A DNA stretch of 64,000 nt from NCBI RefSeq assembly GCF_902713615.1, contig NC_052166.1:45609870-45673869 (forward strand), in the 5' to 3' direction. Positions 2,651 to 61,699 of the stretch are shown piece after piece. This stretch comes from Scyliorhinus canicula (lineage: Eukaryota). Made by a program: the position numbers and the translations under genes. Under the pieces are notes generated by a model that ran no database searches, was not told where the DNA came from, and saw only the letters and a program-made list of their open reading frames with translations. Positions within the stretch are counted from its first letter, which is position 1; every line of letters begins with the position of its first letter.

Positions 2651-2952
2651 ATAATAATCTTTATTGTCACAAGTAGGCTTACATTAACACTGCAATGAAG
2701 TTACTGTGAAAAGCCCTTAGTCGCCTCATTCCGGCACCTGTTCGGGTACACGGAGGGAAAATTCAGAATGTCCAAATTGCCTAACAAGCACATCTTTCGG
2801 GACTTGTGGGAGGAAACCGGATCATCCGGAGGAAACCCATGCAGACACAGGGAGAACGTGCAGATTCCGCACAGTGACCCAAGCCAGGAATCGAACCTGG
2901 GATTCTGGCGCCGTGAAGCAACAGTGCTAACCACTGTGCTACCATGCCGCCC
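2651..2952 (-). mobile_element. tRNA-derived V-SINE (HE1-like head), tail type B
   Basis: Minus strand reads GGGCGGCATGGTAGCACAGTGGTTAGC...GGTTCGATTCC (A/B boxes), V-like core, and tail CTTTTCACAGTA...TACTTGTGACAATAAAGATTATTAT. Confidence 0.85.
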
Positions 2953-3680
2953 AAGTGCCTCATAACAGCCTGAGACATCATCGCACTCATGTGAGACACA
3001 GATTCCTCCAATCTCTCTGCAGTGGTACACGGTGCCGCTAGAGATGCTGATAGAATAGTGATGTCCATGGATGAACCACCCCCACGGAGGCTCAGCATCT
3101 GTGTCAAGCTGCGCTTGCATTGTCCTACAGCAAGTTCTCTCTCACTGCTGCCCCAGCTCATTTGTGACTCACCATGCTAGAATGTCTTTGAGGCCCATCA
3201 AACTGTGTATCCAAGCTGGTGGAAGGTGTGCAAGTGCTTCCTCACAATGTCCAACCTCCTCCTGCACCTTACCGTGTCACCCTTCAAGGACCTGTGGCAG
3301 ATGAAATCCATGGATTGGAACTGACAAGTGGAAAGGGGTCAAAGCCGTCATTGTGTTGTTGGTTATATCTCAGTTACTAGCGACATCAATTCAGCATGTA
3401 AGTGTGGTGTGCCATGGAACTGGAATATATCTTATTCTGTCAGCAGGTTCTAGGAGACCCAATCTCCATGTCAAATGGCCGTGCACTCGACCTCTCTGGA
3501 TCTCCAACCTGCATCCTCCAAAGCGATCAGTGACAATTACTGGAAGGCCAGCTCGCGTTCGCCACCTCTTTTGGAATTCTGTGTCTGGAGTGTGAGAAAA
3601 TGATTGTTTCGAGAGAATGGTTGGGACAGCATTTATGGAGGATGGGTGTGAGACGTGTGGTGAATGTCTTCACCAGGAGA

Positions 3681-3899
3681 TGTGGTGCCTGTGTAACCTT
3701 CAACATTTAAGGATTGAGCTGGAACCCCGGTGGGCTCCGCCTCTGGCTCCCCCCCCCCCCCCCCCCCTGGATGATATATAGTCCTGCGCCCAGAGGGTGG
3801 CGCTCATTTGTACAGAAGTCACTGGCAGGCCAGTTCTTTGTGTAATAAAGCCTTCGTTCACTTGTTCATATGGTCTCGCTGTGAACTGATGATATATCA
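3681..3899 (+). mobile_element. Possible solo LTR
   Basis: TG...CA ends, TATATA at ~3775, AATAAA at ~3844. No clean 4-5 bp TSD. Confidence 0.4.
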
Positions 3900-4536
3900 A
3901 GACGGCAATCAGATAAAGTTGAGTGTCACTGATGGCTGTTCGAATAGGTAAGTGAAGAGGTGCCTCGAGGAGAGGGAGGGGTGAAGCTGCAGAGCATGTT
4001 GGTCTGGGGAACACTGCAGGAGAATGCTTGGGACTATTGCGTGTTCTTGATCAGTACGTACCAGTCAGATAGGGAGGAAAGGGTAGAGCGAGGGAACCGT
4101 GGTTTACCAAAGAAGTGGAATCTCTTGTTAAGAGGGAAAAGGAGGCCTATGTGAAGATGAGGCGTGAAGTTTCAGTTGGGGCGCTTGATAGTTACAGCGA
4201 AGCGAGGAAGGCTCTAAAGAGAGAGCTAAGACGAGCAAGGAGGGGACATGAGAAGTCTTTGGCAGGTAGGATCAAGGAAAACCCAAAAGCTTTCTATAGG
4301 TATGTCAGGAATAAAAGAATGACTAGGGTAAGAGTAGGGCCAGTCAAGGACAGTGGTGGGAAGTTGTGTGTGGAGGCTGAGGAGATAAGCGAGATACTAA
4401 ATGAATACTTTTCGTCAGTATTCACTCAGGAAAAAGATAATATTGTGGAGGAGAATGCTGAGACCCAGGCTATTAGAATAGATTAGAGTAAGAAGTCTTA
4501 CAACACCAGGTTAAAGTCCAACAGGTTTGTTTCAAA

Positions 4537-4571
4537 CACGAGCTTTCGGAGCACGGCTCCTTCTTCAGGTG
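4537..4571 (-). ncRNA. Minimal type I hammerhead ribozyme (mirror copy in the inverted arm)
   Basis: Exact reverse complement of 5955-5989. Confidence 0.75.
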
Positions 4572-5207
4572 AATGGAAAGGCTTGTTCCAGAAATGTTTA
4601 TATAGACACAGTCAGAGATGCCCCGGAATGCGAGCACCTGCAGGCAATCAAATCATCAAAGATGCAGAGAGAGAGGTAACTCCAGGTTAAAGAGGTGTGA
4701 ATTGTCCCAAGCCAGTTCAGTCGGTAGGCCTCTGCAAGTCCAGGCTTGTTGGTGGGGGCCGAATGTAATGCGACATGAATCCCAGATCCCGGTTGAGTCC
4801 GCATTCATGCGTGCGGAACTTAGCTATAAGTTTTTGCTCAGCAATTTTGCGTTGTCGCGTCTCCTGAAGGCCTCCTTGTAGAATGCTGACCCGGAGATCA
4901 GAGGCTGAATGTCCTTGACTGCTGAAGTGTTCCCCAACTGGAAGGGAACAGTCCTGCCTGTTGATAGTCGCACGATGCCCGTTTATTCGTTGTCGCAGTG
5001 TCTGCATGGTCTCGCCAATGTACCACGCTTCGGGACATCCTTTCCTGCAGCGTATGAGGTAGACTACATTGGTCGAGTCGCACGAGTATGCGCCGCGTAC
5101 CTGGTGGGTGGTGTTTCCACGTGTAATGGTGGTGTCCATGTCGATGATCTGGCATGTCTTGCAGAGATTACCCTGGCAGGGTTTTGTGGTGTTGTGGTTG
5201 CTGTTCT

Positions 5208-5809
5208 CGCTGTGAGGATGGACATCTTGCCAAGGTCATCCCCACACCCCCACTACTGGCCTTCAAACAACCGCGCAACCTCAAACAAACCATTGTTTGC
5301 AGCAAATTACCCAGCCTTCAGAACAGCAACCACAACACCACAAACCCTGCCAGGGTAATCTCTGCAAGACATGCCAGATCATCGACATGGACACCACCAT
5401 TACACGTGGAAACACCACCCACCAGGTACGCGGCGCATACTCGTGCGACTCGACCAATGTAGTCTACCTCATACGCTGCAGGAAAGGATGTCCCGAAGCG
5501 TGGTACATTGGCGAGACCATGCAGACACTGCGACAACGAATAAACGGGCATCGTGCGACTATCAACAGGCAGGACTGTTCCCTTCCAGTTGGGGAACACT
5601 TCAGCAGTCAAGGACATTCAGCCTCTGATCTCCGGGTCAGCATTCTACAAGGAGGCCTTCAGGAGACGCGACAACGCAAAATTGCTGAGCAAAAACTTAT
5701 AGCTAAGTTCCGCACGCATGAATGCGGACTCAACCGGGATCTGGGATTCATGTCGCATTACATTCGGCCCCCACCAACAAGCCTGGACTTGCAGAGGCCT
5801 ACCGACTGA
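5208..5809 (+). pseudogene. Penelope ORF C-terminus (linker plus GIY-YIG endonuclease) with a 1-bp frameshift at ~5343
   Basis: PPLLAFKQPRNLKQTIV (ORF 5154) joins PCQGNLCKTC...VVYLIRC...YIGET (ORF 5297) only if the A present in the inverted arm (ACAAAACCC vs ACAAACCC) is restored. Confidence 0.88.
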
Positions 5810-5989: not shown

Positions 5990-6087
5990 TTTGAAACAAA
6001 CCTGTTGGACTTTAACCTGGTGTTGTAAGACTTCTTACTGTGCTCACCCCAGTCCAACGCCGGCATCTCCACATCATTAGAATAGAT

Positions 6088-7595
6088 GGCATTGAGGTGC
6101 GTAGGGAAGAAATGTTGGCAATTCTGGACAAGGTGAAAATAGATAAGTCCTCAGGGCCTGATGGGATTTATCCTAGGATTCTCTGGGAAGCCAGGGAAGA
6201 GATTGCTGAGCCTTTGGCTTTGATTTTTAGGCCATCATTGGCTACAGGAATAGTGCCAGACTGGAGGATAGCAAATGTGGTCCCTTTGTTCAAGAAGGGG
6301 AGTAGAGATAACCCCGGTAACTATAGGCCGGTGAGCCTAACGTCTGTGGTGGGTAAAGTCTTGGAGAGGATTATAAAAGATACGATTTATAATCATCTAG
6401 ATATGAATAATATGATTAGGGATAGCATGGTTTTGTGAAGGGTAGGTCATGCCTCACAAACCTTATCGAGTTCTTTGAGAAGGTGACTGAACAGGTAGAC
6501 GAGGGTAGAGCAGTTGATATGGTGTATATGGATTTCAGTAAAGCGTTTGATAAGGTTCCCCACGGTCGGCTATTGCAGAAAATACGGAGGCTGGGGATTG
6601 AGGGTGATTTAGAGATGTGGATCAGAAATTGGCTAGTTGAAAGAAGACAGAGAGTGGTGGTTGATGGGAAATGTTCAGAATGGAGTTCAGTTACGAGTGG
6701 CGTACCACAAGGATCTGTTCTGGGGCCGTTGCTGTTTGTCATTTTTATAAATGACCTAGAGGAGGGCTCAGAAGGATGGGTGAGTAAATTTGCAGACGAC
6801 ACTAAAGTTGGTGGAGTTGTAGACAGTGCGGAAGGATGTTGCAGGTTACAGAGGGACATAGATAAGCTGCAGAGCTGGGCTGAGAGGTGGCAAATGGAGT
6901 TTAATGAGGAGAAGTGTGAGGTGATTCACTTTGGAAAGAATAACAGGAATGTGGAATATTTGGCTAATGGTAAACTTCTTGGTAGTGTGGATGAGCAGAG
7001 GGATCTCGGTATCCATGTACATAGATCCCTGAAAGTTGCCACCCAGGTTGATAGGGTTGTGAAGGCCTATGGTGTGTTGGCCTTTATTGGTAGAGGGATT
7101 GAGTTCCGGAGCCATGAGGTCATGTTGCAGTTGTACAAAACTCTAGTACGGCCGCATTTGGAGTATTGCGTACAGTTCTGGTCGCCTCATTATAGGAAGG
7201 ACGTGGAAGCTTTGGAACGGGTGCAGAGGAGGTTTACCAGGATGTTGCCTGGTATGGAGGGAAAATCTTATGAGGAAAGGCTGATGGACTTGAGGTTGTT
7301 TTCATTAGAGAGAAGAAGGTTAAGAGGTGACTTAATAGAGGCATACAAAATGATCAGAGGGTTAGATAGGGTGGACAGCGAGAGCCTTCTCCCGCGGATG
7401 GAGGTGGCTAGCACGAGGGGACATAGCCTTAAATTGAGGGGTAATAGATATAGGACAGAGGTCAGAGGTGGGTTTTTTACGCAAAGAGTGGTGAGGCCGT
7501 GGAATGCCCTACCTGCAACAGTAGTGAACTCGCCAACATTGAGGGCATTTAAAAGTTTTTTGGATAAGCATATGGATGATAAGGGCATAGTGTAG
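6088..7595 (+). pseudogene. CR1 ORF2 reverse transcriptase (frameshift near 6425)
   Basis: ORFs 6040-6438 and 6435-7595 are consecutive RT segments in different frames, with non-LTR RT motifs (DFSKAFDKVPH, QGSVLGP, FADD). Confidence 0.9.
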
Positions 7596-7859
7596 ATTAG
7601 ATGGCCTTTAGTTTTTTCCATGTCGGTGCAACATCGAGGGCCGAAGGGCCTGTACTGCGCTGTATTGTTCTATGTTCTAAGTCAGAGTGTGTGAGTTGAC
7701 ACTTTAATGTGGGCTGCACAATATATCCTCTACAAAATGCTACTGCTGATCCAGTTATGTCTATTTGGCTTCTAATGCTCTCTAGTGCCTGTCCACTAGG
7801 AAGAGTATCTCTCTGCAGGCTCAAATAACGCAGGCAAGCCTTTCCACAGCCTTAAATTG

Positions 7860-8027: not shown

Positions 8028-8028
8028 A

Positions 8029-8475: not shown

Positions 8476-9539
8476 AACCAATCAACACTTTCAAACAGTA
8501 TAAATTTGTCATTTCCCCTGACATTAGAATTGCGAACTGCCCCGATGAGTGCAAAATCAAAAGCTTCAGCAAAAAAAAGTCATATTTTCAGCAATATTCA
8601 AAAAGGCCTGCCTTGTACTTCTGCACAATACTAACAAGCAATAGTTTGTACGGGGCTGCAGCAAAGTTAGATTATGCATCATGAAGTTCTTTTTCAAATT
8701 TGGATAGCCATGGGCATTCACGGGAACAATTGTGGTACAACGCCTCCAGGTGTTTTTCAATCGGAACAATGCTTACACATCCCACTCATTCCCAAGCAGA
8801 ATGGGAGATATATGCTGTTAACTGAAAAGGCAGAAATGTTTACAGCAATAGTACTAAATCATAAATGACAAGAAATGAAATGAAAATCGCTTATTGTCAC
8901 GAGTAGGCTTCAAATGAAGTTACTGTGAAAAACAACCTGTTATAGATTTTTTATGGACCTTAACTACCACAGAAAACATCTTAAAGTGAAAAATGTTGAA
9001 TAGAGAAACAATGCAACCATTATGAAGTAGTAGACTGGAAGATTTTACCTGAAATGGTTAATAAAAGCAGAATCAGCTCTTTTGTATCGGGTGTGCATTA
9101 TCACCAGGGTGAAGAACAACGGGGACAATGTGTGGGGAAGATCATGAGGCTGTTTTGAGTGAGATAATCGTGACCCAACAAACCACGCAACACTCCCCAA
9201 AATATCCTGATTCTCTTCCCATTTAAATGATTGCTTCCTTTGCCAAGACACGTCAATACACTTAAAAGAAACATGACAATTCGATGTGCAAATCTTATGT
9301 TGAATCAAGTTTTTAAGCACAAGAAGAGCCATCCTTTGTTGGGTTTTAAAGATGTATGCACATGTATACTAGTGTGCAATTTGCAATGGTTATGTTATTG
9401 AACTAGAAATCCAGAGAATGTGTTCCAATTACATCATGGAAATGTGAGAATTTTAAATACATCACAAAATGATAATAAGCTGGTGCACACACTGGTGTGA
9501 CCACAACGCTGGTTGTAAAAACCCAACTGGTTCACTAAT

Positions 9540-12707: not shown

Positions 12708-12708
12708 G

Positions 12709-15989: not shown

Positions 15990-16615
15990 ATAGTATCATA
16001 GAATTCATACATTGCAGAAGGAGGTCATTCAGCCCATCGAATCTGCACCGATCATCTCCCCCACCCTAACCTTGGAACCTCTAACCCAATAACCCCACCT
16101 AGACTGCACAACACTGGACACTAAGGGGCTAAATTGCATGGCCAATCCATGTAACCTGCACATCTTTGGACTGTGAGGTCCTTGTGAGGCAGCAGTGCTA
16201 ACCACAATGACCTTCATATAATTATAAAATGAAAGTCTAATTGCTAATCATCTCACAATCTAGTGTTAAACTGTCCTCTCACCCTAAGTAGATCATATAA
16301 TTTATAGTGCAAAAGGAGGCCATTCAGCTCTTGAGTCTGCATTAGCCCCTGGAAAGAGTACCCTACTTAAGCCATCCACCCCATCCCTGTAACCCAGCAA
16401 CCCCAGCCAACGTTTTGGACACTCAGGGGTAATTTAGCATAGCCAATCCACCTAGCCTGAACATCTTTGGACTGTGGGAGGAAACCAGAGCACCCGGAGG
16501 AAACCCACGCAGACATGGGAGAACGTGCGAACTCCACACAGACAGTGACCTGAGGCTGGAATTGAACCCGGGATCCTGGAGCTGTGAGGCAGCAGTGCTA
16601 ACCACTGTGCCGCCC
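15990..16615 (-). mobile_element. Two adjacent V-SINE copies (~15990-16210 internally deleted; ~16290-16615) with CR1-type tails
   Basis: tRNA head, V core and GAATGGCCTCCT-type tail on the minus strand. Confidence 0.8.
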
Positions 16616-19087: not shown

Positions 19088-19422
19088 TACAGGCACCACA
19101 GTAACACAAGTGGATAGCACTGTGGTTTCACAGTGCCAGGGAAGCAGGTTCGATTCCCCACTGGATCACTGTCTGTGCGGAGTCTGCATGTTCTCCTCGT
19201 GTCTGCGTGGGTTTCCTCCGGGTGCTCCAGTTTCCTCCCACATTCCAAAGACATGCAGGTTAGGTGGACTGGCCAGGATAAATTGCCCTTAGTGACCAAT
19301 AAGTTTAGGAGGAGTTTTTGGGTTACGGGGATAGGGTGGAAGTGAGGGCTTAAGTGGGTTGGTGCAGATTCGATGGGCCGAATGGCCTCCTTCTGCACTG
19401 CATGTTCTGTGTTCTATGTTCT
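19088..19422 (+). mobile_element. V-SINE (HE1-like), CR1-type tail
   Basis: Head and V core followed by GATGGGCCGAATGGCCTCCTTCTGCACTG...TTCTATGTTCT. Confidence 0.85.
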
Positions 19423-22400
19423 ATTAATCCAGCCTCCAAAAAAATTAAACAAGTGAAGAAGGCACTCAGTAGAGCACATGCACCTGACTGTTAGCTCAAA
19501 TGTTATTACAATTATATAGCTCTTCCTTAGTTTTTTTTCTTGCTTGGTTGGTACTCTGTAATGACAAAGTTGAAAAAGAAAATATTTTTATTAAGAGCTT
19601 TCATCTCACAGAGGCAACATCAGCCCAATCCACATCCAACAACCAGCTCTGAACACTCTGCTCACATTTTGACAGCTGTGACAAATTCCAACACAGCAGC
19701 TAAGAACATCCACAACATTCTAAAACAAACAACAACACTCTAAATCAAATAACCCACAACACTCTTTAAAAAAGTCAAATCACCCAGTCTGGGATTCTTC
19801 GATCCAGATTTTAAGTTCTCCAGCAAGTGGAGAGTTGGGACTGTGTCCCGCTGGTGCTGGGAGTGCTGCCGATGTGGGATTCTCATGGCTTGACTATGCA
19901 CAAAATAGGTATAGTGCCAAACATACTGGTTTCCCTGCAGTTACTAGGGTCAGGCTGCCCGATCCCAGCGTCCAGGGACAGGCCCCTCTTCCTCCGCGCC
20001 ACCCTCACCCCTCACAAAGCAAAGGTTGACCCCTCCTCCCCCTGCTGATAAGTGAAGCACCCTCAACCCCCTCATCAAGGAGGGGCATCCTCAACCCCCC
20101 CCCCCCCCACCCACCATGTGAATAACCGGGTCACCCCTCCCAATACCATGCACTCATGAGAATCACCCTTGCTGAACAAGGGCATTATTCCCACTGATGA
20201 GTTTAAGTTTGAATGGGACAATGTAACTCAGGACAGGTGTGGGCTTATTTCTCTGACTTGGTGCTAGCAGTTTTTTTCTCTCTGTCTGTTTAACCCCATA
20301 ATTGCCCACTACATCTTTGATCCCATTTATGCAATTTCCCAATATCTCCCTCTCTTAACAAGCAGTAAATTGTCCGCATACAGAGACATCCTTTGCTCCC
20401 TACCTCCCCTTTCTATACCCTTCCACCCGGCCGGTGACCTAAGTGCGATGGACAGTGGCTCAATCGCCAAAGTAAACAGTAATGGGGGAAGTGGACACCG
20501 TGCCTTGTACCCCTGTATAACCAAAAGTACCCCGAACACAACTGGGACGCTTGCAGTGGAGGGCCCAGCACAAAAGCCTAACCCACAAAAGGAATTTAGG
20601 CCCAAAGCCAATCTGCGCCAACACCTCAAAAAGGTACCCCCATGCCACCTGGTTCAATGCTCCATGGAGATGATTACCTCTGGATTGACTGCTGACGAGG
20701 GCAACGGCACCACATTCAGAAGCCTCCTAATGTTGGCCGACAACTGCCGGCGCTTAAACAAAACCCTCTTATCATCAGATAATACCCCGGCAGGAACCCC
20801 TCCAAACGGGTTACCAGCTCCTTGGCCAACAGCTTTGCATTGGCATTCAACAGAGAGATGGACCCACATTACATAGGATCCTTGTCCTTTTTCAAATCAA
20901 AGACATCTGCCTGTGTGGTCGGCAACATACCTCGGGATAAAGTATCATTAAACATGTCCAACAGGTGTTGCCCCAACAGTGTCGATAATCTTTTATAAAA
21001 TTCCACAGGGAATCTGTCCAGGCCTGGTGCCTTCCCCGACCACATTGAACAAATACAACTCATAATTTCCTCCAACCTGAGCAATGCCTCCAACTCCTGC
21101 CTCTTTCCCTTTCCACCACCGGGAAGACCAACCTATCCAGAAACTGTACCATAGTCGAGTCCTCCTCCAGGGGCTCAGTCCTGTATAGCCGGTATAGAAT
21201 GGCTCACCGTCTTCCCCGTCAACACAAATTCACACTCCATCTGAACCTCCTTCCTTTCCATTAACAGCTTCGCCATTGGGGCAGCAGAGTATTAACGGTC
21301 CACCTCAAAGATGGGATCCACAAACCTTTGTTTCCCTGCCCTGCCAGACTTATCTCTATGAGCCTTAAACAAATTGATCTCGCCCCTGATGACTGCCTTG
21401 AGTGCTTCCCAGAACGTGGAACATGGATTAAAATCCACATAATTTCCAACAGCAGAAGCTATCCTCACATAAAACCCCTTGTCTGCGAGCAACGCCGTTT
21501 CCAACCTCCATGGGGATCGCTGAGCGTAGCCCGTCTTCAACAACATACCCACATAATCCAGGACGGGATCTTTTACATTTGAGAGTACTCCGCCTCCACA
21601 ATCCTGGGAATGCCTTCCCCACCACAAAGAAATCAATACGGGAGGAAACCCATCCATCACACAATTAAAGTCACCCCCACCCCCCCATAATCAATTGATG
21701 CAAGTCAAGCTCAGGGATGGCCACCAACACCTTCTTAATGAAGTCCATGTCATCCCAATCCGGCACATGTACACTAAGACCACTGGAGCAACCTCCAACA
21801 CCCCATTCATGATCACATATCTCTCCCAGTCCAATATTAGTCACCGAAAAGGTCACCCTGCTATTAATCAACACCACGGCCCCCTTCATTCTCGCATCAA
21901 ATCTCTTATTCCACCCGGTACCAGCCTCCCCGAACAGGCGCCGGAATGTGGCGACTAGGGGCTTTTCAGAGTAACTTCATTTGAAGCCTACCTGTGACAA
22001 TAAGCGATTTACATTTCATTTCATTTTTCACCCTCTCCACAGTCTTGTCTGATCCCGAAACCTCAGATGTATCTCCTGCATGAAAACCACATCCACCTTC
22101 AAACTCTTTAGATGGGAAACAGCTGGGACCTTTCAAACGGCCCATTTAACCCCGTCAATTTCCATGTAACCAACAAGACTGGGGGCCTTACGCCCCTCCC
22201 CCCCTCTACTATGATCAGCCTTATTCCACCCGCAAGGAAGACCACCACTGCCCCAACCTATACCAGCTCCAGACCCATCCAAGATGGCCACTTTCACCTC
22301 CCCCCCCCCCCCCCCCCCCCCACTCACACCAGTACATAAACAAAGAAAGCCTCCTCGTCTGCAATCTACCTCTCTCCCAGCCCCTTCTCCCTTCCTGCCG

Positions 22401-22822: not shown

Positions 22823-23042
22823 GGGGTGGCGCGGTGGTTAGCACTGCTGACTCATGGTCCGAGGTCCCAGGTTCGATCCCGGCCCTGGGTCACTGTCCGT
22901 GTGGAGTTTGCACATTCTCCCCCTGTCTGTGTGGGTCTCACCACCACAACCCAAAGATATGCAGGTTAGATGGATTGGTCATGCTAAATTGTCCCTTAAT
23001 TGGAAAAAAAAATAACTGGCTACACTAAATTGATTTTTTAAA
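22823..23042 (+). mobile_element. Short V-SINE variant, A-rich tail (type C)
   Basis: tRNA head, V core, ...AATTGGAAAAAAAA...TTTTTTAAAAA. Degenerate 15-bp TSD at 22806-22820 / 23043-23057. Confidence 0.8.
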
Positions 23043-23950
23043 AACTTTGTTCAATTCTCCCCCAGTCCATGCTTCTTTACAAAGTCATTGCCTCCTCTAG
23101 CGTGTCAAAATAGTGATCATTGTCTCTGAACATGACTGGAAGTTGAGCTGGGTACACCACTCCAAAACGCGCCTTGCTCCTGTAAAGAGCCACCTTGACC
23201 TTGTTAAACCTTGCACGCCCTTTTGCCAGTTCTGCCCCGACATCCTGATAAATTCTGACATGATGGCCCTCCCAACTACATTCTCGAGTGTCCCTCACCC
23301 ACCTCAGGATCCTCTCCTTATCCAAATAGCTGTGAAGTCGAACTATAATTGCCTATGGTAGCTCCCCAGACCTGGGCTTCTTTCTCAATGATTGAATGGC
23401 CCAGTCCACTTCGGGAGGACCACCCCCACAAGCTTCCCAAAGATCTTTGTCCCATTTTCCGTGGCACTCGTACCTTTTATGCCCTCCGGCAGCCCAACGA
23501 TCCTCACATTTTGGCATCTGGAACAATTCTACAGGTAATTGGCCTTGACCGCCAATATCTCTGCCTCTACATAGAACATACAGTGCAGAAGGAGGCCATT
23601 CGGCCCACTTAAGCCTTCACTTCCACCCTATCCCCGTAACCCAATAACCCCATAACCCCTCCTCACCTTTTTTTGGGCACTAACGGCAATTTATCATGGC
23701 CAATCCACCTTAATCTGCATGTCTTTGGACTGTGGGAAGAAACCGGGGCACCTGATGGAAATCCACGCTCTGCCAACATCGCCACCTCTGCCTCCAAAGA
23801 AACAATCCGATCAATATGCTATTTGACCGTCTCCTCCACATTCCGAATCTTCGAGCCCTGTACCTTCAGCCATTGTTCCACTTCGTCCGAAGTTACATGA
23901 ATGGGTGCCACCACCCCCTTGATCACCTTCGGCAGGTCATCAAAGATCAT

Positions 23951-36251: not shown

Positions 36252-36477
36252 GGGGCAGCACGGTGGCTCAGTGAGTAGCACTGCTGCCTCACGGCGCCGA
36301 GGTCCCAAGTTCAATCCCAGCTCTGGATCACTGTCCGTGTGGGGTTTGCACATTCTCCCCGTGTTTGCGTGGGTTTCGCCCCCACAACTCAAAGATGTGC
36401 AGGGTAGGTGGATTGGTCACACTAAATTGCTGCTTAATTGGAAAAAATGAATTGGGTACTTTAAATTTATTTTTAAA
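36252..36477 (+). mobile_element. Short V-SINE variant, A-rich tail (type C), 14-bp TSD
   Basis: AAAGATTTAGCATA at 36238-36251 and 36478-36491. Confidence 0.88.
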
Positions 36478-36566
36478 AAAGATTTAGCATAACTTTCATC
36501 TTTTTCTATTCTATGCTCCCATTCAAAGCCATGTAACCCATACACTTTCTTAACTACGTTCTCAAC

Positions 36567-36902
36567 GTAGCATGGTGGTTAGCATCAATGCTTCACAGCT
36601 CCAGGGTCCCAGGTTCGATTCCCGGCTGGGTCACTGTCTGTGTGGAGTCTGCACGTCCTCCCCGTGTGCGCGTGGGTTTCCTCCGGGTGCTCCGGTTTCC
36701 TCCCACAGTCCAAAGATGTGCGGGTTAGGTGGATTGGCCATGCTAAATTGCCCGTAGTGTAAGGTTAATGGGGGGATTGTTGGGTTACGGGTATACGGGT
36801 TACGTGGGTTTAAGTGGGGTGATCATTGTTCGGCACAACATCGAGGGCCGAAGGGCCTGTTCTGTGCTGTACTGTTCTATGTTCTATGTTCTATGTTCTA
36901 TG
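36567..36902 (+). mobile_element. V-SINE (HE1-like), CR1-type tail (type A)
   Basis: 3' end CAACATCGAGGGCCGAAGGGCCTGT...(TTCTATG)n matches the CR1 tail at ~7629-7679. Confidence 0.9.
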
Positions 36903-40647: not shown

Positions 40648-41600
40648 GCACAGTGGGTAGCATTGTTCCTTCACAGGTCTAGGGTCCCAGGTTCGATTCC
40701 CGGCTTAGGTCACTGTCTGTGAGGAGTCTGCACGTTATCCCCGGCAAGGAGTCTCCCTTCTGAGGACTAAGCCCCCACGCCGGCATGAGAACCGGCGCCA
40801 ACCACTCTGGCGTCAACAGCCCACGAAACTGCGGAATTCTTTGCACTTTCAGGGGCTAGGTGGACGGCGGAGGCGTTGGCGCTGCTGCAACTGGTGCTGA
40901 AGGGACAATGCGCAGACCAGCTGGACTATTTTGGCGCATGTGCAGGGTTTCCCTTCTCCACGCTGGCCATGGCGGAACCCTACAGGGGCCGCCGCGGAAG
41001 GAAGAAGTGCCCCCACGGAACACGCCCGCCCGCAGATCGGTGGGCCCCGATCGCGGGCCAGGCCACCGTGGGTGTCCCCCCAGGGTCGGATCCCCCGCGC
41101 CCCCACGAGGACCACCCCCACTGACTTACTTGCCAGGTCCCACCAGTACGTGCGTGGAGTGATTCACGCCAGCGGGACTGGTCAAAATCGAACGGCCGCT
41201 CGGCCCATCAGGGCCTGGAGAATCGCCGGGGGGAGTGGGGCGCTGCCAATGGCCTCCGACCGGCGTGGCGTGAATCCAACCCCGCCTGAGAAACGGCGCT
41301 GGAGAATACGGCAGCCGGTGTCGTGGCGGCGGGGCGGGATTCGCGCTGCCCTCCCCCCAGGGATTCTCTGACCCGGCGGGGGGTTCGGAGAATCCCGCTC
41401 CGTGTCTGCGTGGGTTTCCTCCGGGTGCTCTGGTTTCTTCCCACATGTCCCAAAAGACGTGGTGTTAGGGAATTTGGAAATTCTGAATTCTCCCTCTGTG
41501 TACCCGAACAGGCGCCGGAATGTAGCGACTGGGGGCTTTTCACAGTAACTTCATTGCAGTGTTAATGTAAGCCTACTTATGACAATAAAGATTATTATTA
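40648..41600 (+). mobile_element. V-SINE tail type B split by a GC-rich MITE (~40742-41400)
   Basis: SINE ...GCACGTTATCCCC| resumes |CGTGTCTGCGTGGG... and ends GACAATAAAGATTATTATTA. Confidence 0.85.
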
Positions 41601-41609
41601 AATAATTAT

Positions 41610-43064: not shown

Positions 43065-44070
43065 ACATAGAAATCATAGATTCCTCCAGTGCAGAAGGAG
43101 GCCATTCGGCTCATCAACCCTGAGCACTCCACCCAAGTCCACTCCTCCATCCTATCCCTATAACCCCTTAGCATAACCTACACATCTTTGGACACTAAGG
43201 AGCAATTTAATATGGCCAATCCATCTAACCTGAACATCTTTGGACTGTGGGAGGAAACCGGAGCACCCGGAGGAAACGCACAGAAGCACAGGGAGAATGT
43301 TCAAACTCCACACAGTCACCCATGGTTAGAATCAAACCTGGGCCCCTGGCGCTGATCTGCCTCCTAGTTTTGCTGCTGTCTCAGCCACTCCATATAAGTT
43401 CATTTTGTGAAACATGCTTCCTTCATACCTCTGCCTCAACACCTCTCTACTGCATTCAAAAGCTTCCTCAAGAGCCTTCATTTCGACTAGGCTTTCAGAC
43501 ATTCACAATTCCTCTAAATTTCCTTGTGGTGTTTTGGGGTCAAGTTGTCCACTGCCTTACATAAAGTGTCTGAAATGTCTCTCCATGTGTAAGGTGCTCT
43601 CTGGACTGATTTTGGTTGTCCTATGAGTCTTGGATGCAAGAACCAAATGCTGATCATGATCTCTTTTGACATATTCAACTCTTTTGGCTATACTTAGTGC
43701 TGCCCTGCAATTGATAGGACAATTTTAGCTATGAGTCTGCCCCTAGGACATAGAAATCATAGAATCCATAGAGTACAGGAGGCCATTTGTCCCATCGAGC
43801 CTATGCCGACCCTGAGCACCACCAAGCCCATTTCTCCACCCTATCCCAATCACCTCTTAACCTTTGGAGTCTAGGGAGTAATTTAGGATGGTCAATCCCC
43901 CTAACCTGCACATCTTTGGACTGTGGGAGGAAACTGGATCACCTGAAGGAAATATACTCAGGTTCAGGAAGAAAGTGCAAACTTCACAAACCACCCATGG
44001 TTAGAATCAAACCTGGGCCCCTGGCGCTGTGAGGCAACAGTGTCAAACACTTTGCCACCATACCACCCCA
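43065..44070 (-). mobile_element. Two related V-SINE copies (43065-43354 and 43748-44070)
   Basis: Both have a CR1-type tail and share CACCCATGGTTAGAATCAAACCTGGGCCCCTGGCGCTG. Confidence 0.8.
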
Positions 44071-45707
44071 ACACTTTCAACTGAATACTTAGGTATAATA
44101 ATAATATTTTGTTGTCACAAGTAGGCTTACATTAACACTGCAATGAAGTTACTGTGAAAAGCCCCTGGTCGCCACATTCCGGCACCTGTTCGGGTACACA
44201 GAGGGAGAATTCAGAATTCTCAGCTGGTACAGGAATTGAACCCACTGCTGGCATTGTTCTGCATTACAAACCCACTGTCTAGCCCATTCAGCTAAACCAG
44301 CCATTCCCGATTTTCCACGCTGCTCGCTGGTAATGTCATGAGGTCCACTCCCACAAAAAGCGAGAACCTCATTTTGATGGATTTAAATAAATTTTAAAAT
44401 GATTAGATCGTCCCCCACCACATGATCCCCCTCACTGGACATTCAAATCTCACCGATTTGGCGTCACGTTGGCGAGGCTTACAACGGCAATTTAAAAAAC
44501 AGATTCAATTGAGGAGATACCCAGAGTTCGCTAAGGTAAGGATAGCTCCCGGGCCGGGGGGGGGGGGGGGGGGGGGGGGGCGGGGGATTGAGCCCCCCTA
44601 ATTGTGCTGGGGGTGGTTGCAGGAGTCCTTGATGATTGTGCTGGGGCAGGAGAGCACCCAATGATTTTGTGGTGGAGGCGGAGATGTGGGGGGCATGTTG
44701 AAGTAAGTGAACTTAGAACGAAGAGTCGGCCATGCCGGCTGTATCATGCCTCGCCCCTCCAAAGTGATGGCGTAAACTCCAACCCAGTCACTTTTTTTAA
44801 AAACTCAGAGCCTCACGCCCTGGAGAGAAAACTGGTCTGTGCACCTGGAGAGCTACACACCATTTCTCAATCGCAGCCTGACACTTTGAAAAAATGTGGT
44901 AAGATTCCACCCGTAATTTATTTTTTTAATTCTTTCAAGGAATGTGGGCATCACTGGTAAGGCCAGTATTTTTTGCGCATTCCTAATTGCTAATTGCCCC
45001 TTGAATTGAGTGTCCCTTTCAGGCAAAGGTCAACCACATTACTGCCGTCACATGTAGGCCAGATCAGGTAAGGGCGGCAGATTTCTGCCTTGCCTAAAAG
45101 GGCATTAGTGAGCTAGATGGGCTTTTACAACAATCGACCGTAATCAATTACAGAACGGTCATTACATATTTATTAATTGAATTTAAACTCTACTATCTGC
45201 TGTTGTGAGACCCATGTCCCCAGCCTGAGCCTCTGGATTACTAGTTCAGTGACAGTAATACCATCTCCCCACAAAACGTAAGTAAGTTAGAAGCAGTAGA
45301 GCTCCCCATGCAAATTCCTGAGATAATCTGCCCATGAGATGCTCCTTCGTAACTCCTTTTAACCCAAAGGCCTTTCAAAGATATTAAAATCTGTATCTAG
45401 TTTGACAATACTAAGGAAGGGCATTGACTCAGAGACATATTTTATTTTCTACTGGACAGGAACCGTAACTATCAATGGTAACGTCTTATCAACTGTTTGC
45501 ATCTTGCAACTAAATAATCCAAATGTATTTAATTCTTGACCATATTTGTTTTAACGAGCGGTGAATTGTGACCCTTTTGTATAGCAACTTGTAAAGCAGA
45601 CATGTGGGTTCTGACAATTTACTGTCTTCTCATTTTAATTTTATAAAGGCAATAGTTTTAGAACAGCAGTGCAGCTTTCCAGATGCATTCGAGAGGAAGT
45701 GTCCAGC

Positions 45708-50440: not shown

Positions 50441-50927
50441 GAGAGGGAGTACACACTTATACTCTCCTGATGAAGGACCAACAAGTGATACACTACATAG
50501 ATGGAAACATAAAGACAATGGACAACTAAACTTCTACCTCCACTATACCATTCTATATCAAAGGAGTATATTTTGAATACAATGACGCAGCATTGAAGAG
50601 CTAAGGCTCTAAATTAGAATTATTTATATTTTTACTGTACATCATGGGACAGTAATAGTTTTGTTAATATTTATTAATGCAACTTGCCATATTATACAAT
50701 ACCTTTATTCAAAATAATATTTTGTTTCATTTTATTTTAGTGGCTGTTCCTTTTAAATCCAATCACTCTACATTAGAATTGTATATGAGTGATTGCTGGT
50801 CAGTTCACTCTATCAAGCTACCTGATACAATGTTCTAAATTACTGGGTGGCAAGAGAAATAATTAAAACTTTTCCAGTGATGTAAAATTTGTTCCGTTTT
50901 TAACTGACTGACAGCCAGTCTTTGATA

Positions 50928-51268
50928 TAGAATTTACAGTGCAGAAGGAGGCCATTCGGCCCATCAAGTCTGCACCGGCTCTTGGAAAGAGTGCCCTACC
51001 CAAGCCCACATCTCCACCCTATCTCCATAACCCAGTAACCCCACCCAACACTAAGGGCAATTTTGGACACTAAGGGCAATTTAGCATGGCCAATCCACCT
51101 AACCTGCACATCTTTGGACTGAGGGAGGAACTGGAGCACCCGGAGAAAACCCATGCAGACACAGGGAGAACGTGCAGACTCCGCACAGACAGTGACCCAA
51201 GCCGGGAATCAAACCTGGGACCCTGGAGCTGTGAAACAATTGTGCTAACCACTGTGCTACAATGCTGC
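50928..51268 (-). mobile_element. V-SINE (HE1-like), CR1-type tail
   Basis: Complete head, V core and tail. Confidence 0.88.
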
Positions 51269-51567: not shown

Positions 51568-52890
51568 AGGAGGCATTGTCGGTCATTTAGGGGGCTATTT
51601 TGGGAGAGGAGGCACCGCTGGAAGGGATCAAAGCGAAGTGGGAGGAAGAGTTGGGAGAGGATATGGAGGAGGGGTTCTGGTGTGAGGTGCTCCGGAGAGT
51701 GAATGTCTCCACCTCGCGCGAGGTTGGGGCTAATACAGTTGAAGGTGGTATATAGGGAGCACCTCACAAGAGCGAGGATGAGCCAGCTCTTTGAGGGGAT
51801 GTGTTTGAACGTTGCGGGGGGAGCGGGCCTGCGAACCACGTTCATACGTTTTTGTCCTGTCCAAAGCTGGAGGATTACTGGAAGGAGATTTTTAGGGTAA
51901 TCTCTAAAGTGGCGCATGTGAAACTGGAGCAGGGCCCTCGGCAGGCCATATTCGGGGTGTCGGACCAGCCGGGGTTGGAAGCGGGTGCGGATGCAGATGT
52001 TGTAGCCTTCGCCTTGTTGATCGCCCGAAGGCGGATCCTGCTGGGATGGAGATTTACCAGAATGTTGCCTGGTATGGAGGGAAGATTTTGAGGGAACGCT
52101 GAGGGAACTGAGGCTGTTTTCGTTAGAGAGAAGGTTAAGAGGTGACTTAATTGAGGCATACAAGATGATCAGAGGATTAGATAGGGTGGACAGTGAGAGC
52201 CTTTTTCCTCGGATGGTGATGTCTCGCACGAGGGGACATAGCTTTAAATTGAGGGTAGATATAGAACAGATGTCAGACGTGGGTTCTTTACTCAGAGAGT
52301 AGTAAGGGTGTGGAATGACCTGCCTGCAACAGTAGTGGACTCGCCAACACTAAGGGCATTCAAATGGTCATTGGATAGACATATGGATGATAAGGGAATA
52401 GTGTAGATGGGCTTTAGAGTGGTTTCACAGGTCGGCGCAACATCGAGGGCCGAAGGGCCTGTACTACTCTGTAATGTTCTATGTTCTATGTATGTTCAAT
52501 CTCTCCACCCTGTGCCCTGGCGTGGCGTGGCGGGGTGACCTGTTGGAATTCTTGACACTTCAGAAGGTCAAATTTGAACTGAGGGGAAGGATGGAGGGGT
52601 TCTATAATTCATGGGCCTTATTCATTATGCACTTTTGAGAATTGGATTACATCAAACATTAGGGGGGGTTTGGAGGAGAGACTGTATGTGTTAATGGTGA
52701 CCATGGTTGATTCCTGATTCCTTTTTGTTATTTGTTTATGTTAACATATGGGCTGCTGTTTGGCTGTCTGGTGGGAGGATTGGATTGTTGTTGATATGGG
52801 GATCGATATTATATTCGTTACTGCTTATTGTTTATTGTGGGTGGGTGTAAATTTGGAAGAAAAAGGAGAAAAAAATTATTTTTTTTAAAA
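51568..52890 (+). mobile_element. L1-clade 3' fragment with 17-bp TSD, interrupted by a young CR1 3' end (~52050-52492)
   Basis: C-terminal cysteine-rich region (RCGGSGPANHVHTFLSCPKLEDYW). TSD AAGAAGGCATCAGATGA (51551-51567) / AGGAAGTCATCAGATGA (52891-52907). Confidence 0.82.
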
Positions 52891-52926
52891 AGGAAGTCAT
52901 CAGATGATTATTTGAATGGAGAAAAT

Positions 52927-54791: not shown

Positions 54792-55100
54792 GGGCAGCAC
54801 GGTAGCACAGTGGTTAGCATTATTGCTTCACAGCTCCAGGGTCCCAGGTTTGATTCCGGCTTTGGTCACTGTCTGTGTGGAGTCTGCACGTTCTCCCTGT
54901 GTGTTCGTTGGTTTCCTCCGGGTGCTCTGGTTTCCTCCCAAAAGTCTTGCTGTCAGGTAATTTGGACATTCTGAATTCTCCCTCCTTGTACCTGAGCAGG
55001 TGCCGGAATTTGGCGACTAGGGGCTTTTCACAGTAACTTCATTTCAGTGCTAATGTGCGCCTGTTTGTGAGAATAAAGATTATTATTATTGTTATTATTA
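54792..55100 (+). mobile_element. V-SINE, tail type B
   Basis: GGGCAGCACGGTAGCACAGTGG head. Tail GGGCTTTTCACAGTAACTTC...AATAAAGATTATTATTATT. Confidence 0.88.
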
Positions 55101-58996: not shown

Positions 58997-59229
58997 GTAA
59001 GTAATAATATATTATCCATTTGACAAATGTGATGTGATGAATGTAGGAAATTGTTAACAAAAATTCTGATGTAATGTTATTAAAAACCCGGGATTCAAAT
59101 ACACGATCAGTATGTCTACTAAAGCTGAAATAAGGTGTTGTAAAAGTGAGGTAATCATTGTTTATAACCATATACTTGTTTACATATAGATGGCAAATGG
59201 AGTATCATTGATAGAAACGGGGTTCCCTG

Positions 59230-59742
59230 GGGTGTAGATCATTAATGAGGGATGGTGTTTAGTCCTAGCTAATCAGGTCATGGGACATCTTAGTGAGATA
59301 GAGATGATGTAATTAATGGGACCAGCCAGGTCTGTATGTAGTTTTTGGCAGTTTTGCCAGAGTAGGATTTGAGTCTGACAAGACAGAAGGATTTTCAGGT
59401 TGTTCCTGAGCCTGCACATTGCTAACGTTAGTTATGAGTGGATTTTGAGCTGTATTGATTTACTTAGTTGGGATATATATACTAGCAGGTCTAGATAGTG
59501 AGTATTTTTTTTCCTTCAATTTAAAAACTGTTTAATTGTTAATTGTAAAGCTCTTTCTTTAATAATGTGATTGATTCTATGTTTAAATTAAAGTCTGTTT
59601 TAAGATAAAGGATACCTATTGGTCAGAGCCATCACTCCTGGGGTGATGTACCCTTTCCTCACAGCTTTACAAATTGCAAATTGTTGCAGTTTCTAACTCG
59701 GTGCCCTGACAGAAAATTGGAGTCCGGTTCGACATCCTAACA
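59230..59742 (+). mobile_element. Possible LTR remnant in an intron
   Basis: ATTAAA followed by a U5-like region ending ...CCTAACA. 5' boundary unclear. Confidence 0.35.
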
Positions 59743-60039
59743 GTGATAACTGATTCTCATCAAAAAAGTAAATGTAACACACCAATGAACATCCCACACC
59801 CATTGCTCATGTGCAGCAGCAAAGGTGGCAGAGGAACAGTCTCCCATGATTGGAGGAGCAGTATCTTTCAGAAATTTCCACTCCACTTACCTGAATTTTG
59901 AAAACTGCCCCATTGGAGGCTTTCTGGGCCATGTGCGGCCCGTGACAAGCCTGAACTAAATCTTCAATAAATCATTGGCTCGGATTCAGCTAGAGTATTG
60001 CACCCAACTCTTGACACCACAATTTGATGAAGCTCCCAC

Positions 60040-60555
60040 GGCCTGAAGATGATGTTGAAGAGATCAATCAGAATGAAACAAGGGGTGAGGGGCTTCTGTT
60101 ACGCGGTGTGTTAAGAGAAATTAGGATTGTTCTTTGAGGTCAGTATTGAAAATTATGTGGGGCTTTGTTGGAGTCCATAAAAGAGAAACTGTTTCCACTG
60201 GCAGGAGGGCAGAAACCAAAGGCCACAGCTTTAAGATGCTTGTCAGAAGAACCAGTGGGAAGGTGAGGTGACATTTAGTTACACAGCAAGGAGCTATGAC
60301 CTGGAATGTACTGCGTGAAAGGGCAATTAGGGATGGGCAATAATTGCTGGCCAGTGATGCTGGAGATGAAAAATGAGTGGCGGAAGCGTAATCAGTAGTA
60401 ACTTTCAAAAGGGAATTGGACATAAACTATGAACAGGAATGTTTGCCGAGTTATGGAGAAGAGCAGTGGATGGGATTAACTCAAAGTAGCTCTATCAAAA
60501 AGCCAGCACAGGCACAATGAGCCAAATGACTCTTTCTGTGTTGTAAGATTCTAGT
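60040..60555 (+). mobile_element. Old CR1 3' fragment
   Basis: REKLGLFF...ETVSTGRRAETKGHSFK-like translation and a CR1-type tail. Confidence 0.65.
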
Positions 60556-61394
60556 ATTCCACTGGAGCACTGCTCATACCACATTCCTATGTCATTGAGC
60601 TCTTCTCAATGGCTGGAGTTCGGCTACAATTGAATTATCCTGTTGTAATGGGCTATGCTATGAGACCTGGCTGCTTTGACTGTTGTGCTATTCTGTCACT
60701 TCCAGGTTTTACAGTAATGTTTTCTAACCTGAGGCAATTTGCACCTGCTGTAGTTACCCTCTGAGCTTCCGACTGTGCTTCAATGCACAGGTGTTTTCCC
60801 AACTTTTTTCTGTAGCAGTAGGCTCCGGAAAGAAATTAAGTTTTCCCTGGGCCAGAGTCCATTTCTCCATTGCTTCTGACTGGACATCGTACAGGCCTGC
60901 AGCTCCCTGCCATTTTTAAAATAAAATTGTAAAATTTACTGTGTTGCCATAGTTTTGTATTTAACCTGCTGCTGGAATTCCAATTTATGAGGATCTTTTA
61001 CTCTTCGCTGAGCTAGCTTTGATGTTTGTTTGTTTTGCTGCTGCATTTCCATCCTGTTCTGGATTCAATACAAATGAAAGAATTTGGTGCATGCTTCCCC
61101 ATTGTTGCCATCTCCATTCACCCCGGCAGTCATACACTGGATCAGAGCGACCAATCACAAATATTCTTTTTAAATGCAGTATATAAAAACTATGAATACA
61201 AATATCCAATAGTCAATTATAAATCACTTATTTTCCACCCTTCGATAAAATTGGCACAAAAAGCTGTTTGGTTTCCTACACCTATCTCCCTCATGGTAAC
61301 AGTTGTTTCAATCCACATGTTCTGCTTTTGTTATTTGGCGATGTGTTCATAATAGAAAATCACAATTTTAACATTTATGTAAATTCATACAAAG

Positions 61395-61699
61395 TAATAA
61401 TCTTTATTATTGTTACAAGTAGGCTTACATTAACACTACAATGAAGTTACTGTGAAAATCCTCTCGTCGCCACACTACGGCACCTGTTCGGTTACACTGA
61501 GGGAGAATTCAGAATGTCCAATTCACCTAACAGCACGTTTTTCAGGACTTGTGGGAGGAAACTGGAGCATCCAGAGGAAACCCGCGCAGACACAGGGAGA
61601 ACGTGCGGACTCCGCACAGACAGCGACCCAAGCTGGGAATCGAACCTGGAATCCTGGTGCTGCGAAGCAACAGTGCTAACACTGTGCTACCGTGTCACC
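61395..61699 (-). mobile_element. V-SINE, tail type B
   Basis: Same structure as 2651-2952. Confidence 0.85.

What the first reader, a model, noticed from the sequence alone, without database searches (positions are those of the whole stretch)
2651..61699. One SINE head with three interchangeable 3' tails pointing to three LINE classes in the same window
Seen: the same tRNA head and V core ends in three ways. (A) A CR1 tail with (TTCTATG)n, e.g. 36567-36902 versus CR1 ~7629-7679. (B) CTTTTCACAGTA...TACTTGTGACAATAA plus (ATT)n or (CATTT)n at 2651, 40648, 54792 and 61395, with fragments at ~8870, ~21930 and ~44100. Tail B shares both blocks with the Rex1/Babar-like LINE 3' end at 27599-27650 (CTTTTCACAGTA...TACATGTGACAATAA). 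(C) A short T-run/A-run tail with 14-15 bp TSDs (22823, 36252), like the L1 end at ~52870-52890. Known: the HE1 SINE/HER1 LINE shared tail. Inference: tail swapping lets one SINE lineage use CR1, Rex1/Babar and L1 machinery. I am not aware of B and C being described, but cannot check.
Basis: partly seen in the sequence, partly recalled or inferred. Interest (0 to 1): 0.72.

Follow-up and report, generated by a model that had tools for sequence, protein, structure and literature searches.

The report
Shark V-SINE subfamilies with different LINE-type tails
One family of small parasitic DNA elements (tRNA-derived V-SINEs) in this shark-like genome comes in three old subfamilies whose 3' ends imitate different LINE retrotransposons, a real pattern but an instance of the well-known "module exchange" by which SINEs change their LINE partner.

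Summary
At least 17 copies or fragments of a tRNA-headed V-core SINE lie in the window, with three kinds of 3' end.

- **Tail A (CR1-type):** it comes in two variants. Each matches a different CR1-like LINE end in the window.
- **Tail B:** it ends in the same terminal signature as the Rex1/Babar-like LINE end at 27600-27652. I found that signature again at the 3' ends of homologous LINEs of two teleosts. The match is about 27 nt in two blocks. The loop length and the microsatellite unit differ, so the LINE copy in the window is not the donor.
- **Origin of tail B:** it is part of a ~120-nt module shared with a second SINE that has a different tRNA-like head (44098-44318). The swap was therefore probably SINE to SINE.
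- **Tail C:** a short AT-rich tail. One copy has a perfect 14-nt target duplication; the other copy's does not exceed chance. Its likeness to the L1 end is only a T-run plus an A-run, so the L1 link is plausible but weak.

In a head/core tree B and C are each one clade, which points to one swap per lineage rather than free interchange.

Partner switching by tail exchange is established in the literature. Many first-reader notes on other DNA of this genome report the same pattern. No genome-wide test was possible.

The parts
2651..2955 (-). Type B V-SINE, full length: head, V core, tail-B module, (ATT)n
54792..55095 (+). Type B V-SINE, full length
61395..61700 (-). Type B V-SINE, full length
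40648..41605 (+). Type B V-SINE split by a 656-bp insertion (40745-41400) of another interspersed repeat
44098..44318 (-). Second SINE family: a different tRNA-like head (ARAGORN tRNA-Ile-like at 44220-44303; Rfam tRNA 16.6 bits), no V core, and the same ~120-nt tail-B module (87-93% identical to the B copies)
21929..22035 (+). 5'-truncated tail B' variant: shorter hairpin loop, (CATTT)n
8872..8935 (-). Tail B' terminal piece, about 60 nt, (CATTT)n
36567..36902 (+). Type A1 V-SINE: its CR1-type tail with (TTCTATG)n matches the CR1 ends at 7629-7679 and 52432-52491
19101..19424 (+). Type A2 V-SINE, full length: second CR1-type tail variant (GGGCCGAATGGCCTCCTTCTGCAC...)
50925..51268 (-). Type A2 V-SINE
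16299..16614 (-). Type A2 V-SINE; a further A2 piece lies at 16008-16175(-)
43087..43354 (-). Type A2 V-SINE, partial
43800..44068 (-). Type A2 V-SINE, directly downstream of the second-family SINE
36252..36477 (+). Type C V-SINE: an 18-nt core deletion and a short AT-rich tail ending in a T-run plus AAA. It is flanked by a perfect 14-nt duplication, AAAGATTTAGCATA, at 36238-36251 and 36478-36491
22823..23044 (+). Type C V-SINE. Its flanks match 10/15, which is not above chance.
6040..7682 (+). CR1-clade LINE: RT ORF pieces (RVT_1), stop at 7595, then a ~90-nt 3' UTR ending in (TTCTATG)n at 7623-7682
52118..52500 (+). 3' piece of the same CR1 family (84% identical), inserted into the L1 ORF2 end
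33700..34660 (-). Another CR1/L2-like LINE 3' part; its end (33717-33738) resembles tail A2
27600..28380 (-). Rex1/Babar-like LINE, 5'-truncated: ORF2 C-terminal pieces, a ~160-nt 3' UTR, a terminal hairpin at 27616-27648 and (AAATC)n
51703..52895 (+). L1-type LINE 3' part: ORF2 C-terminus at 51703-52088, continued at 52500-52637 beyond the CR1 insertion, then a 3' UTR ending in an A-rich run, a T-run and an A-run near 52850-52890

Best explanation
The window comes from an elasmobranch-like genome and is littered with copies of one tRNA-derived SINE lineage that carries the conserved V core (HE1-like). The lineage has split into old subfamilies that differ in their 3' module.

**Subfamily A** keeps a CR1-type tail. 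Two variants exist, each matching the 3' UTR end of a different CR1-like LINE in the window. CR1-like LINEs presumably copy it by recognising that tail.

**Subfamily B** arose once. The V-SINE body was joined, at a short microhomology (CAT|TCTGAATT), to the ~120-nt 3' module of another tRNA-SINE. The likely routes are template switching or recombination between SINE RNAs or DNAs. That module ends in the terminal signature of the Rex1/Babar-like LINE group: CACAGTA, a hairpin, TGTGACAATAA, then a variable microsatellite. B is therefore most likely copied by a Rex1/Babar-like LINE. That LINE is a subfamily other than the copy at 27600.

**Subfamily C** lost the LINE-like tail and 18 nt of the core. 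It ends in a short AT-rich tail with a T-run and a few A's. It integrates with a long target duplication, as expected for priming on an A-rich end by an L1-type LINE.

**Shown:** the three tail types, the shared junctions, the LINE-end matches for A and B, and one 14-nt duplication for C.
**Inferred:** which LINE actually mobilises B and C.
For: **Shared body and separate lineages.**
- The shared head and core are seen in alignment A1.
- A-box and B-box motifs occur in 7 heads against 0 in shuffles.
- In the head/core tree B is one clade (91/95), C is one clade (99/98) and A is paraphyletic.

**Tail A.**
- Tail A1 is 94% and 90% identical to the CR1 ends at 7629-7679 and 52432-52491.
- Tail A2 resembles the LINE end at 33717-33738.
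- The CR1 RT is closest to bird and turtle CR1-like proteins.

**Tail B.**
- The pattern occurs at the LINE end 27616-27648 with 0 expected by chance.
- The same LINE end appears in an independent contig, L001.
- Homologous LINEs of Merluccius polli (L122) and Silurus asotus (L123) also end in ACTGTAT...ATGACAATRA followed directly by a microsatellite, while the rest of their 3' UTRs cannot be aligned.
- The LINE hairpin is predicted with z about -2.
- The tail-B module is 87-93% identical over ~120 nt to a second SINE with another head.
- All B copies share the same junction (alignment A2).
- A B-type copy with yet another microsatellite sits in an unrelated contig, L124.

**Tail C.**
- The ~45-nt tail is conserved between the two copies.
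- One copy has a perfect 14-nt target duplication, while no A or B copy has an exact flanking repeat longer than 7 nt.
- An L1-type ORF2 end is present in the window.
Against: **Tail B.**
- The similarity between tail B and the LINE is only 12/12 plus 14/15 nt and is not found by BLAST.
- The loop is 6 nt in the LINE against 15 or 26 nt in the SINEs.
- The microsatellite units differ: AAATC in the LINE, ATT, CATTT or CTTTA in the SINEs.
- Folding of the SINE tails gives no consistent hairpin and z about 0.
- The RT of the LINE at 27600 is missing, so its Rex1/Babar clade rests on C-terminal homology and on my knowledge of teleost elements.

**Tail C.**
- There are only two copies.
- The second duplication is at chance level.
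- The A-run is only 3-6 nt and follows a T-run that could terminate Pol III.
- There is no significant similarity to the L1 end.
- The target sites fit TT|AAAA poorly.

Confidence: 0.62

Rival explanations
1. Tail B is not Rex1-dependent. On this reading the two short blocks shared with the LINE end reflect an old or convergent hairpin motif, and B (with the second SINE family) is mobilised by another LINE, for example an L2- or CR1-group element with microsatellite ends that is not represented in the window.
For: BLAST finds no similarity between tail B and the LINE end. The loop length and the microsatellite unit differ. The SINE tails do not fold consistently into the LINE-like hairpin. About 90 nt of the tail-B module upstream of the motif match nothing in the LINE 3' UTR.
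Against: The combined motif is expected 0 times by chance. It sits at the very 3' end in both, directly before a microsatellite. The same terminal signature is kept in LINEs of this protein family from a shark-like source and from two teleosts, whose microsatellites also differ from each other. No other LINE end in the window resembles tail B.
Confidence: 0.2
2. Type C is not an L1-dependent subfamily. On this reading it is an old V-SINE variant whose original LINE-type tail was lost or decayed, or which is mobilised by some other LINE that makes target duplications. The T-run plus A-run end and the one long duplication would then not point to L1.
For: There are only two copies, 84% alike. The second duplication is at chance level. 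The similarity to the L1 end is not significant. The A-run is only 3-6 nt, and the target sites fit TT|AAAA poorly.
Against: The ~45-nt tail is conserved between the two copies and ends at the same point. One duplication is perfect over 14 nt, whereas none of the 7 A/B copies has an exact flanking repeat longer than 7 nt. An L1-type LINE is present. Several unchecked first-reader notes on other windows report long duplications for this short-tailed type; these are leads only.
Confidence: 0.35
3. The different tails are local accidents at single loci, such as nested insertions, deletions or assembly chimeras, rather than transposing subfamilies.
For: The window is full of nested insertions, for example B_40648 split by another repeat and the L1 split by CR1.
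Against: Four B copies at different loci, plus one in an unrelated contig, share the same junction. Two C copies share the same tail and the same core deletion. The tail types form clades in the head/core tree.
Confidence: 0.03

Closest known systems
HE1 SINE / HER1 LINE of sharks and rays (V-SINE superfamily; Ogiwara et al. 1999, 2002, as listed in PMC3747384 and PMC4824008)
   Same: A tRNA-derived head, a conserved central V core, and a 3' tail shared with a CR1-like LINE ending in short tandem repeats. Type A here fits this description.
   Different: I had no HE1 or HER1 reference sequence, so identity was not tested. Types B and C carry other 3' modules, and I did not find them described for HE1 in the papers I could search.
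Module exchange and partner switching in SINE superfamilies (CORE-SINEs Ther-2/Mar-1, MetaSINEs, bivalve HCD-SINEs, CmiSINE/SacSINE1-CM: PMC3531059, PMC4824008, PMC11481361, PMC5499810)
   Same: The same head and core carry different LINE-derived tails. A change of tail is taken as a change of partner LINE, and template switching is the proposed mechanism. In Callorhinchus the new tail came from another SINE, because the shared region is longer than the LINE-like part. That is exactly the situation of type B and the second SINE family here.
   Different: The partners proposed here are a Rex1/Babar-like LINE and an L1-type LINE, beside CR1, within one elasmobranch genome.
SINE2-5_NV / Rex1-24_NV of Nematostella (table in PMC3747384)
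   Same: A tRNA-SINE whose 3' end matches a Rex1-clade LINE.
   Different: It is a cnidarian pair. That table lists no vertebrate SINE with a Rex1 partner. The match here is limited to a terminal signature.
UnaL2/UnaSINE1 type 'stringent' recognition (Kajikawa and Okada 2002, cited in PMC4824008)
   Same: A 3'-terminal stem-loop followed by a short tandem repeat, shared by a LINE and a SINE.
   Different: In that pair the tail, including the repeat unit, is the same in LINE and SINE. Here the loop and the repeat unit differ. Nothing was tested experimentally.
L1-dependent A-tailed SINEs (Alu, B1, B2 type; PMC3575423)
   Same: No LINE-like tail sequence, an A-rich end and a 14-nt target duplication (one copy).
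   Different: The A-run is very short and preceded by a T-run. Only two old copies were seen, and the target motif is poor.

Membership tests
V-SINE superfamily (HE1-like) | 5' head derived from tRNA with Pol III A and B boxes | tested here: met
   The pattern TRGCNNNGTGR...GTTYRAYYCC occurs in 7 heads at a fixed spacing of 43-55 nt, against 0 in 50 shuffles. The Rfam tRNA model does not reach E 1 on the A1 head, so the head is tRNA-like and not a recognisable tRNA.
V-SINE superfamily (HE1-like) | ~80-bp central V domain conserved with other V-SINEs (DANA, Lun1, HE1) | not testable with these tools
   No reference V-domain sequence was available. The core is the best conserved part among the copies and, from memory, resembles the DANA core.
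V-SINE superfamily (HE1-like) | 3' tail shared with a CR1-like LINE (HER1), ending in short tandem repeats | tested here: met
   This holds for type A only: 90-94% identity over 51-60 nt to the CR1 ends at 7623-7682 and 52432-52491, both with (TTCTATG)n.
Rex1/Babar LINE (the element at 27600-28380) | RT phylogeny places it in the Rex1 clade | not testable with these tools
   This copy is 5'-truncated and has no RT. Its C-terminal pieces have 2751 relatives, including teleost proteins with RVT_1 and ALKBH8_N (PF09004) domains and one that UniRef names an endonuclease/exonuclease/phosphatase domain protein. No named Rex1 reference was available.
Rex1/Babar LINE (the element at 27600-28380) | Conserved 3' UTR followed by oligonucleotide repeats of variable length and sequence (PMC6274825) | tested here: met
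   The 3' UTR is 87% identical in L001. The ends are (AAATC)n here, (ATCTTA)n in hake and (CTTGA)n in catfish.
SINE-LINE pair with a shared 3' tail (type B with the Rex1/Babar-like LINE) | Significant sequence similarity of the 3' ends | tested here: inconclusive
   Two blocks match, 12/12 and 14/15 nt, at the very end in both. The pattern is expected 0 times by chance. No BLAST alignment is found, and the loop is 6 nt against 15 or 26 nt.
SINE-LINE pair with a shared 3' tail (type B with the Rex1/Babar-like LINE) | Same terminal repeat unit in SINE and LINE | tested here: not met
   The LINE has (AAATC)n. The SINEs have (ATT)n, (CATTT)n and (CTTTA)n. The unit also varies between LINE lineages of this group.
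L1-dependent SINE (type C) | A-rich 3' end without a LINE-specific tail | tested here: inconclusive
   The tail ends in a T-run plus 3-6 A. It has no significant similarity to the L1 3' end.
L1-dependent SINE (type C) | Target-site duplications of about 7-20 nt at TT|AAAA-like sites | tested here: inconclusive
   One copy has a perfect 14-nt duplication. The other has 10/15, which is chance level. The targets are TGT|AAAG and AAC|AACT.
SINE module exchange | The same junction between body and new tail in independent copies, with the tail module also present in another element | tested here: met
   The junction is at CAT|TCTGAATT in all B copies, and the module is shared with the second SINE at 44098-44318. 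A B-type copy is also present in contig L124.

The most novel reading that the evidence does not exclude
Type B and the second SINE family would be the first vertebrate SINEs shown to depend on Rex1/Babar LINEs. The terminal signature they share (CACWGTA, a hairpin, TGACAATRA, then a variable microsatellite) is kept from sharks to teleosts, and would then be the element that the Rex1 reverse transcriptase recognises. Together with type A (CR1) and type C (L1-type), one V-SINE lineage would have used three LINE clades, two stringent and one relaxed, within one genome.
Probability: 0.3. Interest if true: 0.5.

Novelty: new member of a known kind. Interest (0 to 1): 0.33.

Why it matters
SINE superfamilies with conserved cores are thought to survive for hundreds of millions of years by changing their LINE partner. 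A genome in which the CR1-type, Rex1-type and A-tailed forms of one lineage coexist with all three LINE types would be a convenient natural system for dating such switches.

It would also allow a test of what a Rex1/Babar reverse transcriptase recognises. In the papers I could search I found no experimental work on this, and only a cnidarian SINE partner is listed there.

The principle itself is textbook knowledge for SINE biologists. The gain is a well-documented case and a candidate recognition motif, not a new mechanism.

Tried and rejected
1. **Metagenome scan.** I scanned metagenome contigs for a 17-nt piece of tail B. All 119 loci were chance matches, and none carried the rest of the tail.
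2. **Reads.** No read-based copy numbers, empty sites or family-wide ends could be obtained. 
3. **Shark genome DNA.** Fetching it around LINE proteins failed because the files were too large or the gene range too long.
4. **Word-indexed protein search.** With the Rex1-like C-terminus it gave only 3 hits.
5. **PDB search.** The L1 piece gave nothing.
6. **Rfam.** At gathering scores it finds nothing in the window.
7. **RNA folding.** Folding the SINE tails gave no consistent support for the LINE-like hairpin, so I make no claim of covariation.
8. **Degenerate duplication test.** A 15-nt test with offsets does not separate C from A and B.
9. **Literature.** Searches for RepeatMasker-style class names, for RSg-1 with Rex1, and for the Pfam domain gave nothing useful. 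The V-SINE paper itself is not held.
10. **Local accidents.** I rejected the idea that the tails are single-locus accidents, because the junctions are shared between loci.

Full report
**What is there.** The window (64 kb, 46% G+C, no N) is dense with retrotransposon debris. Alignment A1 shows that all share a 5' head and a central core up to the motif CTAAATTGCCC, after which they diverge into three kinds of 3' end. Seven heads carry A-box and B-box motifs at a fixed spacing, against none in 50 shuffles. ARAGORN and Rfam do not call these heads tRNA, so they are tRNA-like only. I could not compare the core with a reference V domain. HE1 of sharks and rays is listed as a V-SINE with the CR1-like partner HER1 (PMC3747384, PMC4824008).

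**Type A.**
- The copy at 36567-36902 ends in a tail that is 90-94% identical over 51-60 nt to two LINE ends, 7623-7682 and 52432-52491. All three carry (TTCTATG)n.
- The first of these LINE ends lies 28 nt after the stop of an RVT_1 ORF. That ORF's best named relatives are bird and turtle CR1-like proteins (50-54% over 98%) and shark proteins.
- Most A copies (19101, 50925-51268, 16299-16614, 43087-43354, 43800-44068 and others) carry a second variant of this tail. It resembles the end of another CR1/L2-like LINE at 33717-33738.
- Type A therefore already contains two tail variants that follow two LINE subfamilies.

**Type B: the tail and the LINE end.**
- Four full copies end in a module of about 120 nt.
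- Its last part reads CTTTTCACAGTA, then 26 nt, then TACTTGTGACAATAA, then (ATT)n.
- A shorter-loop variant (15 nt) with (CATTT)n is seen at 21929-22035 and 8872-8935.
- On the minus strand at 27600-28380 lies a 5'-truncated LINE. It has three ORF2 C-terminal pieces, a ~160-nt 3' UTR, and the end CTTTTCACAGTA, 6 nt, TACATGTGACAATAA, (AAATC)n.
- The combined pattern is expected 0.00 times in the window by chance, and each block alone is also far above chance. BLAST does not join the SINE tail and the LINE end.

**Type B: what kind of LINE this is.**
- The LINE's C-terminal piece has 2751 relatives in the representative library.
- One piece carries the Pfam ALKBH8_N-like domain, which also occurs, together with RVT_1, in long teleost relatives. 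UniRef names one teleost relative an endonuclease/exonuclease/phosphatase domain protein.
- An independent contig (L001) has the same LINE (87%) with the same end.
- The homologous LINEs of Merluccius polli (L122) and Silurus asotus (L123) also end in ACTGTAT...ATGACAATGA + (ATCTTA)n and CACTGTGTATAGT...ATGACAATAA + (CTTGA)n. The rest of their 3' UTRs cannot be aligned with the shark-like LINE.
- So the block TGACAATRA directly before a variable microsatellite is a signature of this LINE group, and tail B has it. This fits the published description of Rex1: a conserved 3' UTR followed by an oligonucleotide repeat of variable length (PMC6274825).
- That the group is Rex1/Babar rests on my knowledge of the teleost elements. 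The RT is missing in this copy, so the clade was not tested.

**Type B: limits.** The loop and the repeat unit differ between the LINE in the window and the SINEs. The SINE tails do not fold consistently into the LINE-like hairpin: z is about 0, against about -2 for the LINE. The LINE copy in the window is therefore a relative of the presumed partner, not the donor of the tail.

**Where tail B came from.** The 'fragment' at ~44100 is in fact a complete SINE of another family. It has a different tRNA-like head (ARAGORN tRNA-Ile-like; Rfam tRNA 16.6 bits), no V core, and the same ~120-nt module at 87-93% identity. Alignment A2 shows that all B copies follow type A up to TTGGMCAT and follow this second SINE from ATTCTGAATTCTCCCT onward, with a few shared bases at the joint. 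The shared stretch is four times longer than the LINE-like end. The swap was therefore most likely between two SINEs, as argued for CmiSINE and SacSINE1-CM in Callorhinchus (PMC5499810). A B-type copy with a (CTTTA)n end lies in an unrelated contig, L124.

**Type C.**
- Two copies (36252-36477 and 22823-23044) share an 18-nt deletion in the core. They also share a ~45-nt AT-rich tail that ends in a T-run and a few A's.
- The first copy is flanked by a perfect 14-nt duplication.
- No A or B copy has an exact flanking repeat longer than 7 nt.
- The second copy's flanks match 10/15. My null test gives P = 0.024 for that, and two of seven A/B copies reach the same score.
- The window does hold an L1-type LINE end. 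The ORF2 C-terminus at 51703-52088 hits a Scyliorhinus torazame protein that UniRef names a reverse transcriptase zinc-binding domain protein. That protein's C-terminus continues in the window at 52500-52637, beyond an inserted CR1 piece.
- The L1 3' end and tail C share only TTTTTTAAAAA, which is not significant. L1-type mobilisation of C is thus a reasonable reading of one good duplication and an A-ended tail, and no more.

**History.** In a maximum-likelihood tree of head plus core, the B copies form one clade (91/95) and the C copies another (99/98). A is paraphyletic. C differs from A and B by about 25%. Each tail type is thus an old subfamily that arose once, and the tails are not freely interchangeable. 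Copies within each type are 70-91% alike, so none is young.

**Comparison with what is known.** A change of 3' tail as a change of partner LINE, by template switching or recombination, is an established model for CORE-, V-, Deu- and MetaSINEs (PMC3531059, PMC4824008, PMC5499810, PMC11481361). In the table of SINE/LINE pairs in PMC3747384, the only Rex1 partner is that of a Nematostella SINE. I found no paper describing a vertebrate SINE with a Rex1-type tail or a V-SINE with an L1-type end. Repbase and Dfam could not be consulted. I therefore file this as a new member of a known kind.

**Limits.**
- Shark genome DNA could not be fetched.
- All counts come from one window and a few short contigs.
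- The scan's first readers noted the same three-tail pattern in many other windows of this genome. These are unchecked notes and I do not count them as support.

Noticed in passing
window 40745-41400: A 656-bp G+C-rich insertion splits the B copy at 40648. It belongs to another interspersed repeat with at least 6 further partial copies in the window (9555-9990, 24003-24356, 26096-26540, 38042-38084, 39176-39358, 45710-46292), 68-84% identical.
   Followed up: partly
window 5297-5806: An ORF inside the CR1 element has a weak GIY-YIG hit (E 4e-4, below the Pfam cut-off).
   Followed up: partly
window 51703-52895: The L1-type ORF2 C-terminus is interrupted between ...ILLGWR and PGVAW... by a 5'-truncated CR1 3' piece (52118-52500). 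This gives a relative order of insertion: L1 first, then CR1.
   Followed up: partly
L124 (ENA ERZ27276711 contig k141_68411), 148-257 and about 330-560: A contig labelled metagenomic carries a Rex1-like LINE fragment with a B-type V-SINE next to it. Several contigs of this sample (L001, L002, L125, L126) are 79-88% identical to the window's LINE, so the sample holds elasmobranch-like host DNA.
   Followed up: no
The tool itself says the filter also trips by chance.
   Followed up: no
window 405-2438 (-): Two long ORFs (400 and 266 aa) have no Pfam hit and lie next to the B copy at 2651. I did not examine them further.
   Followed up: no
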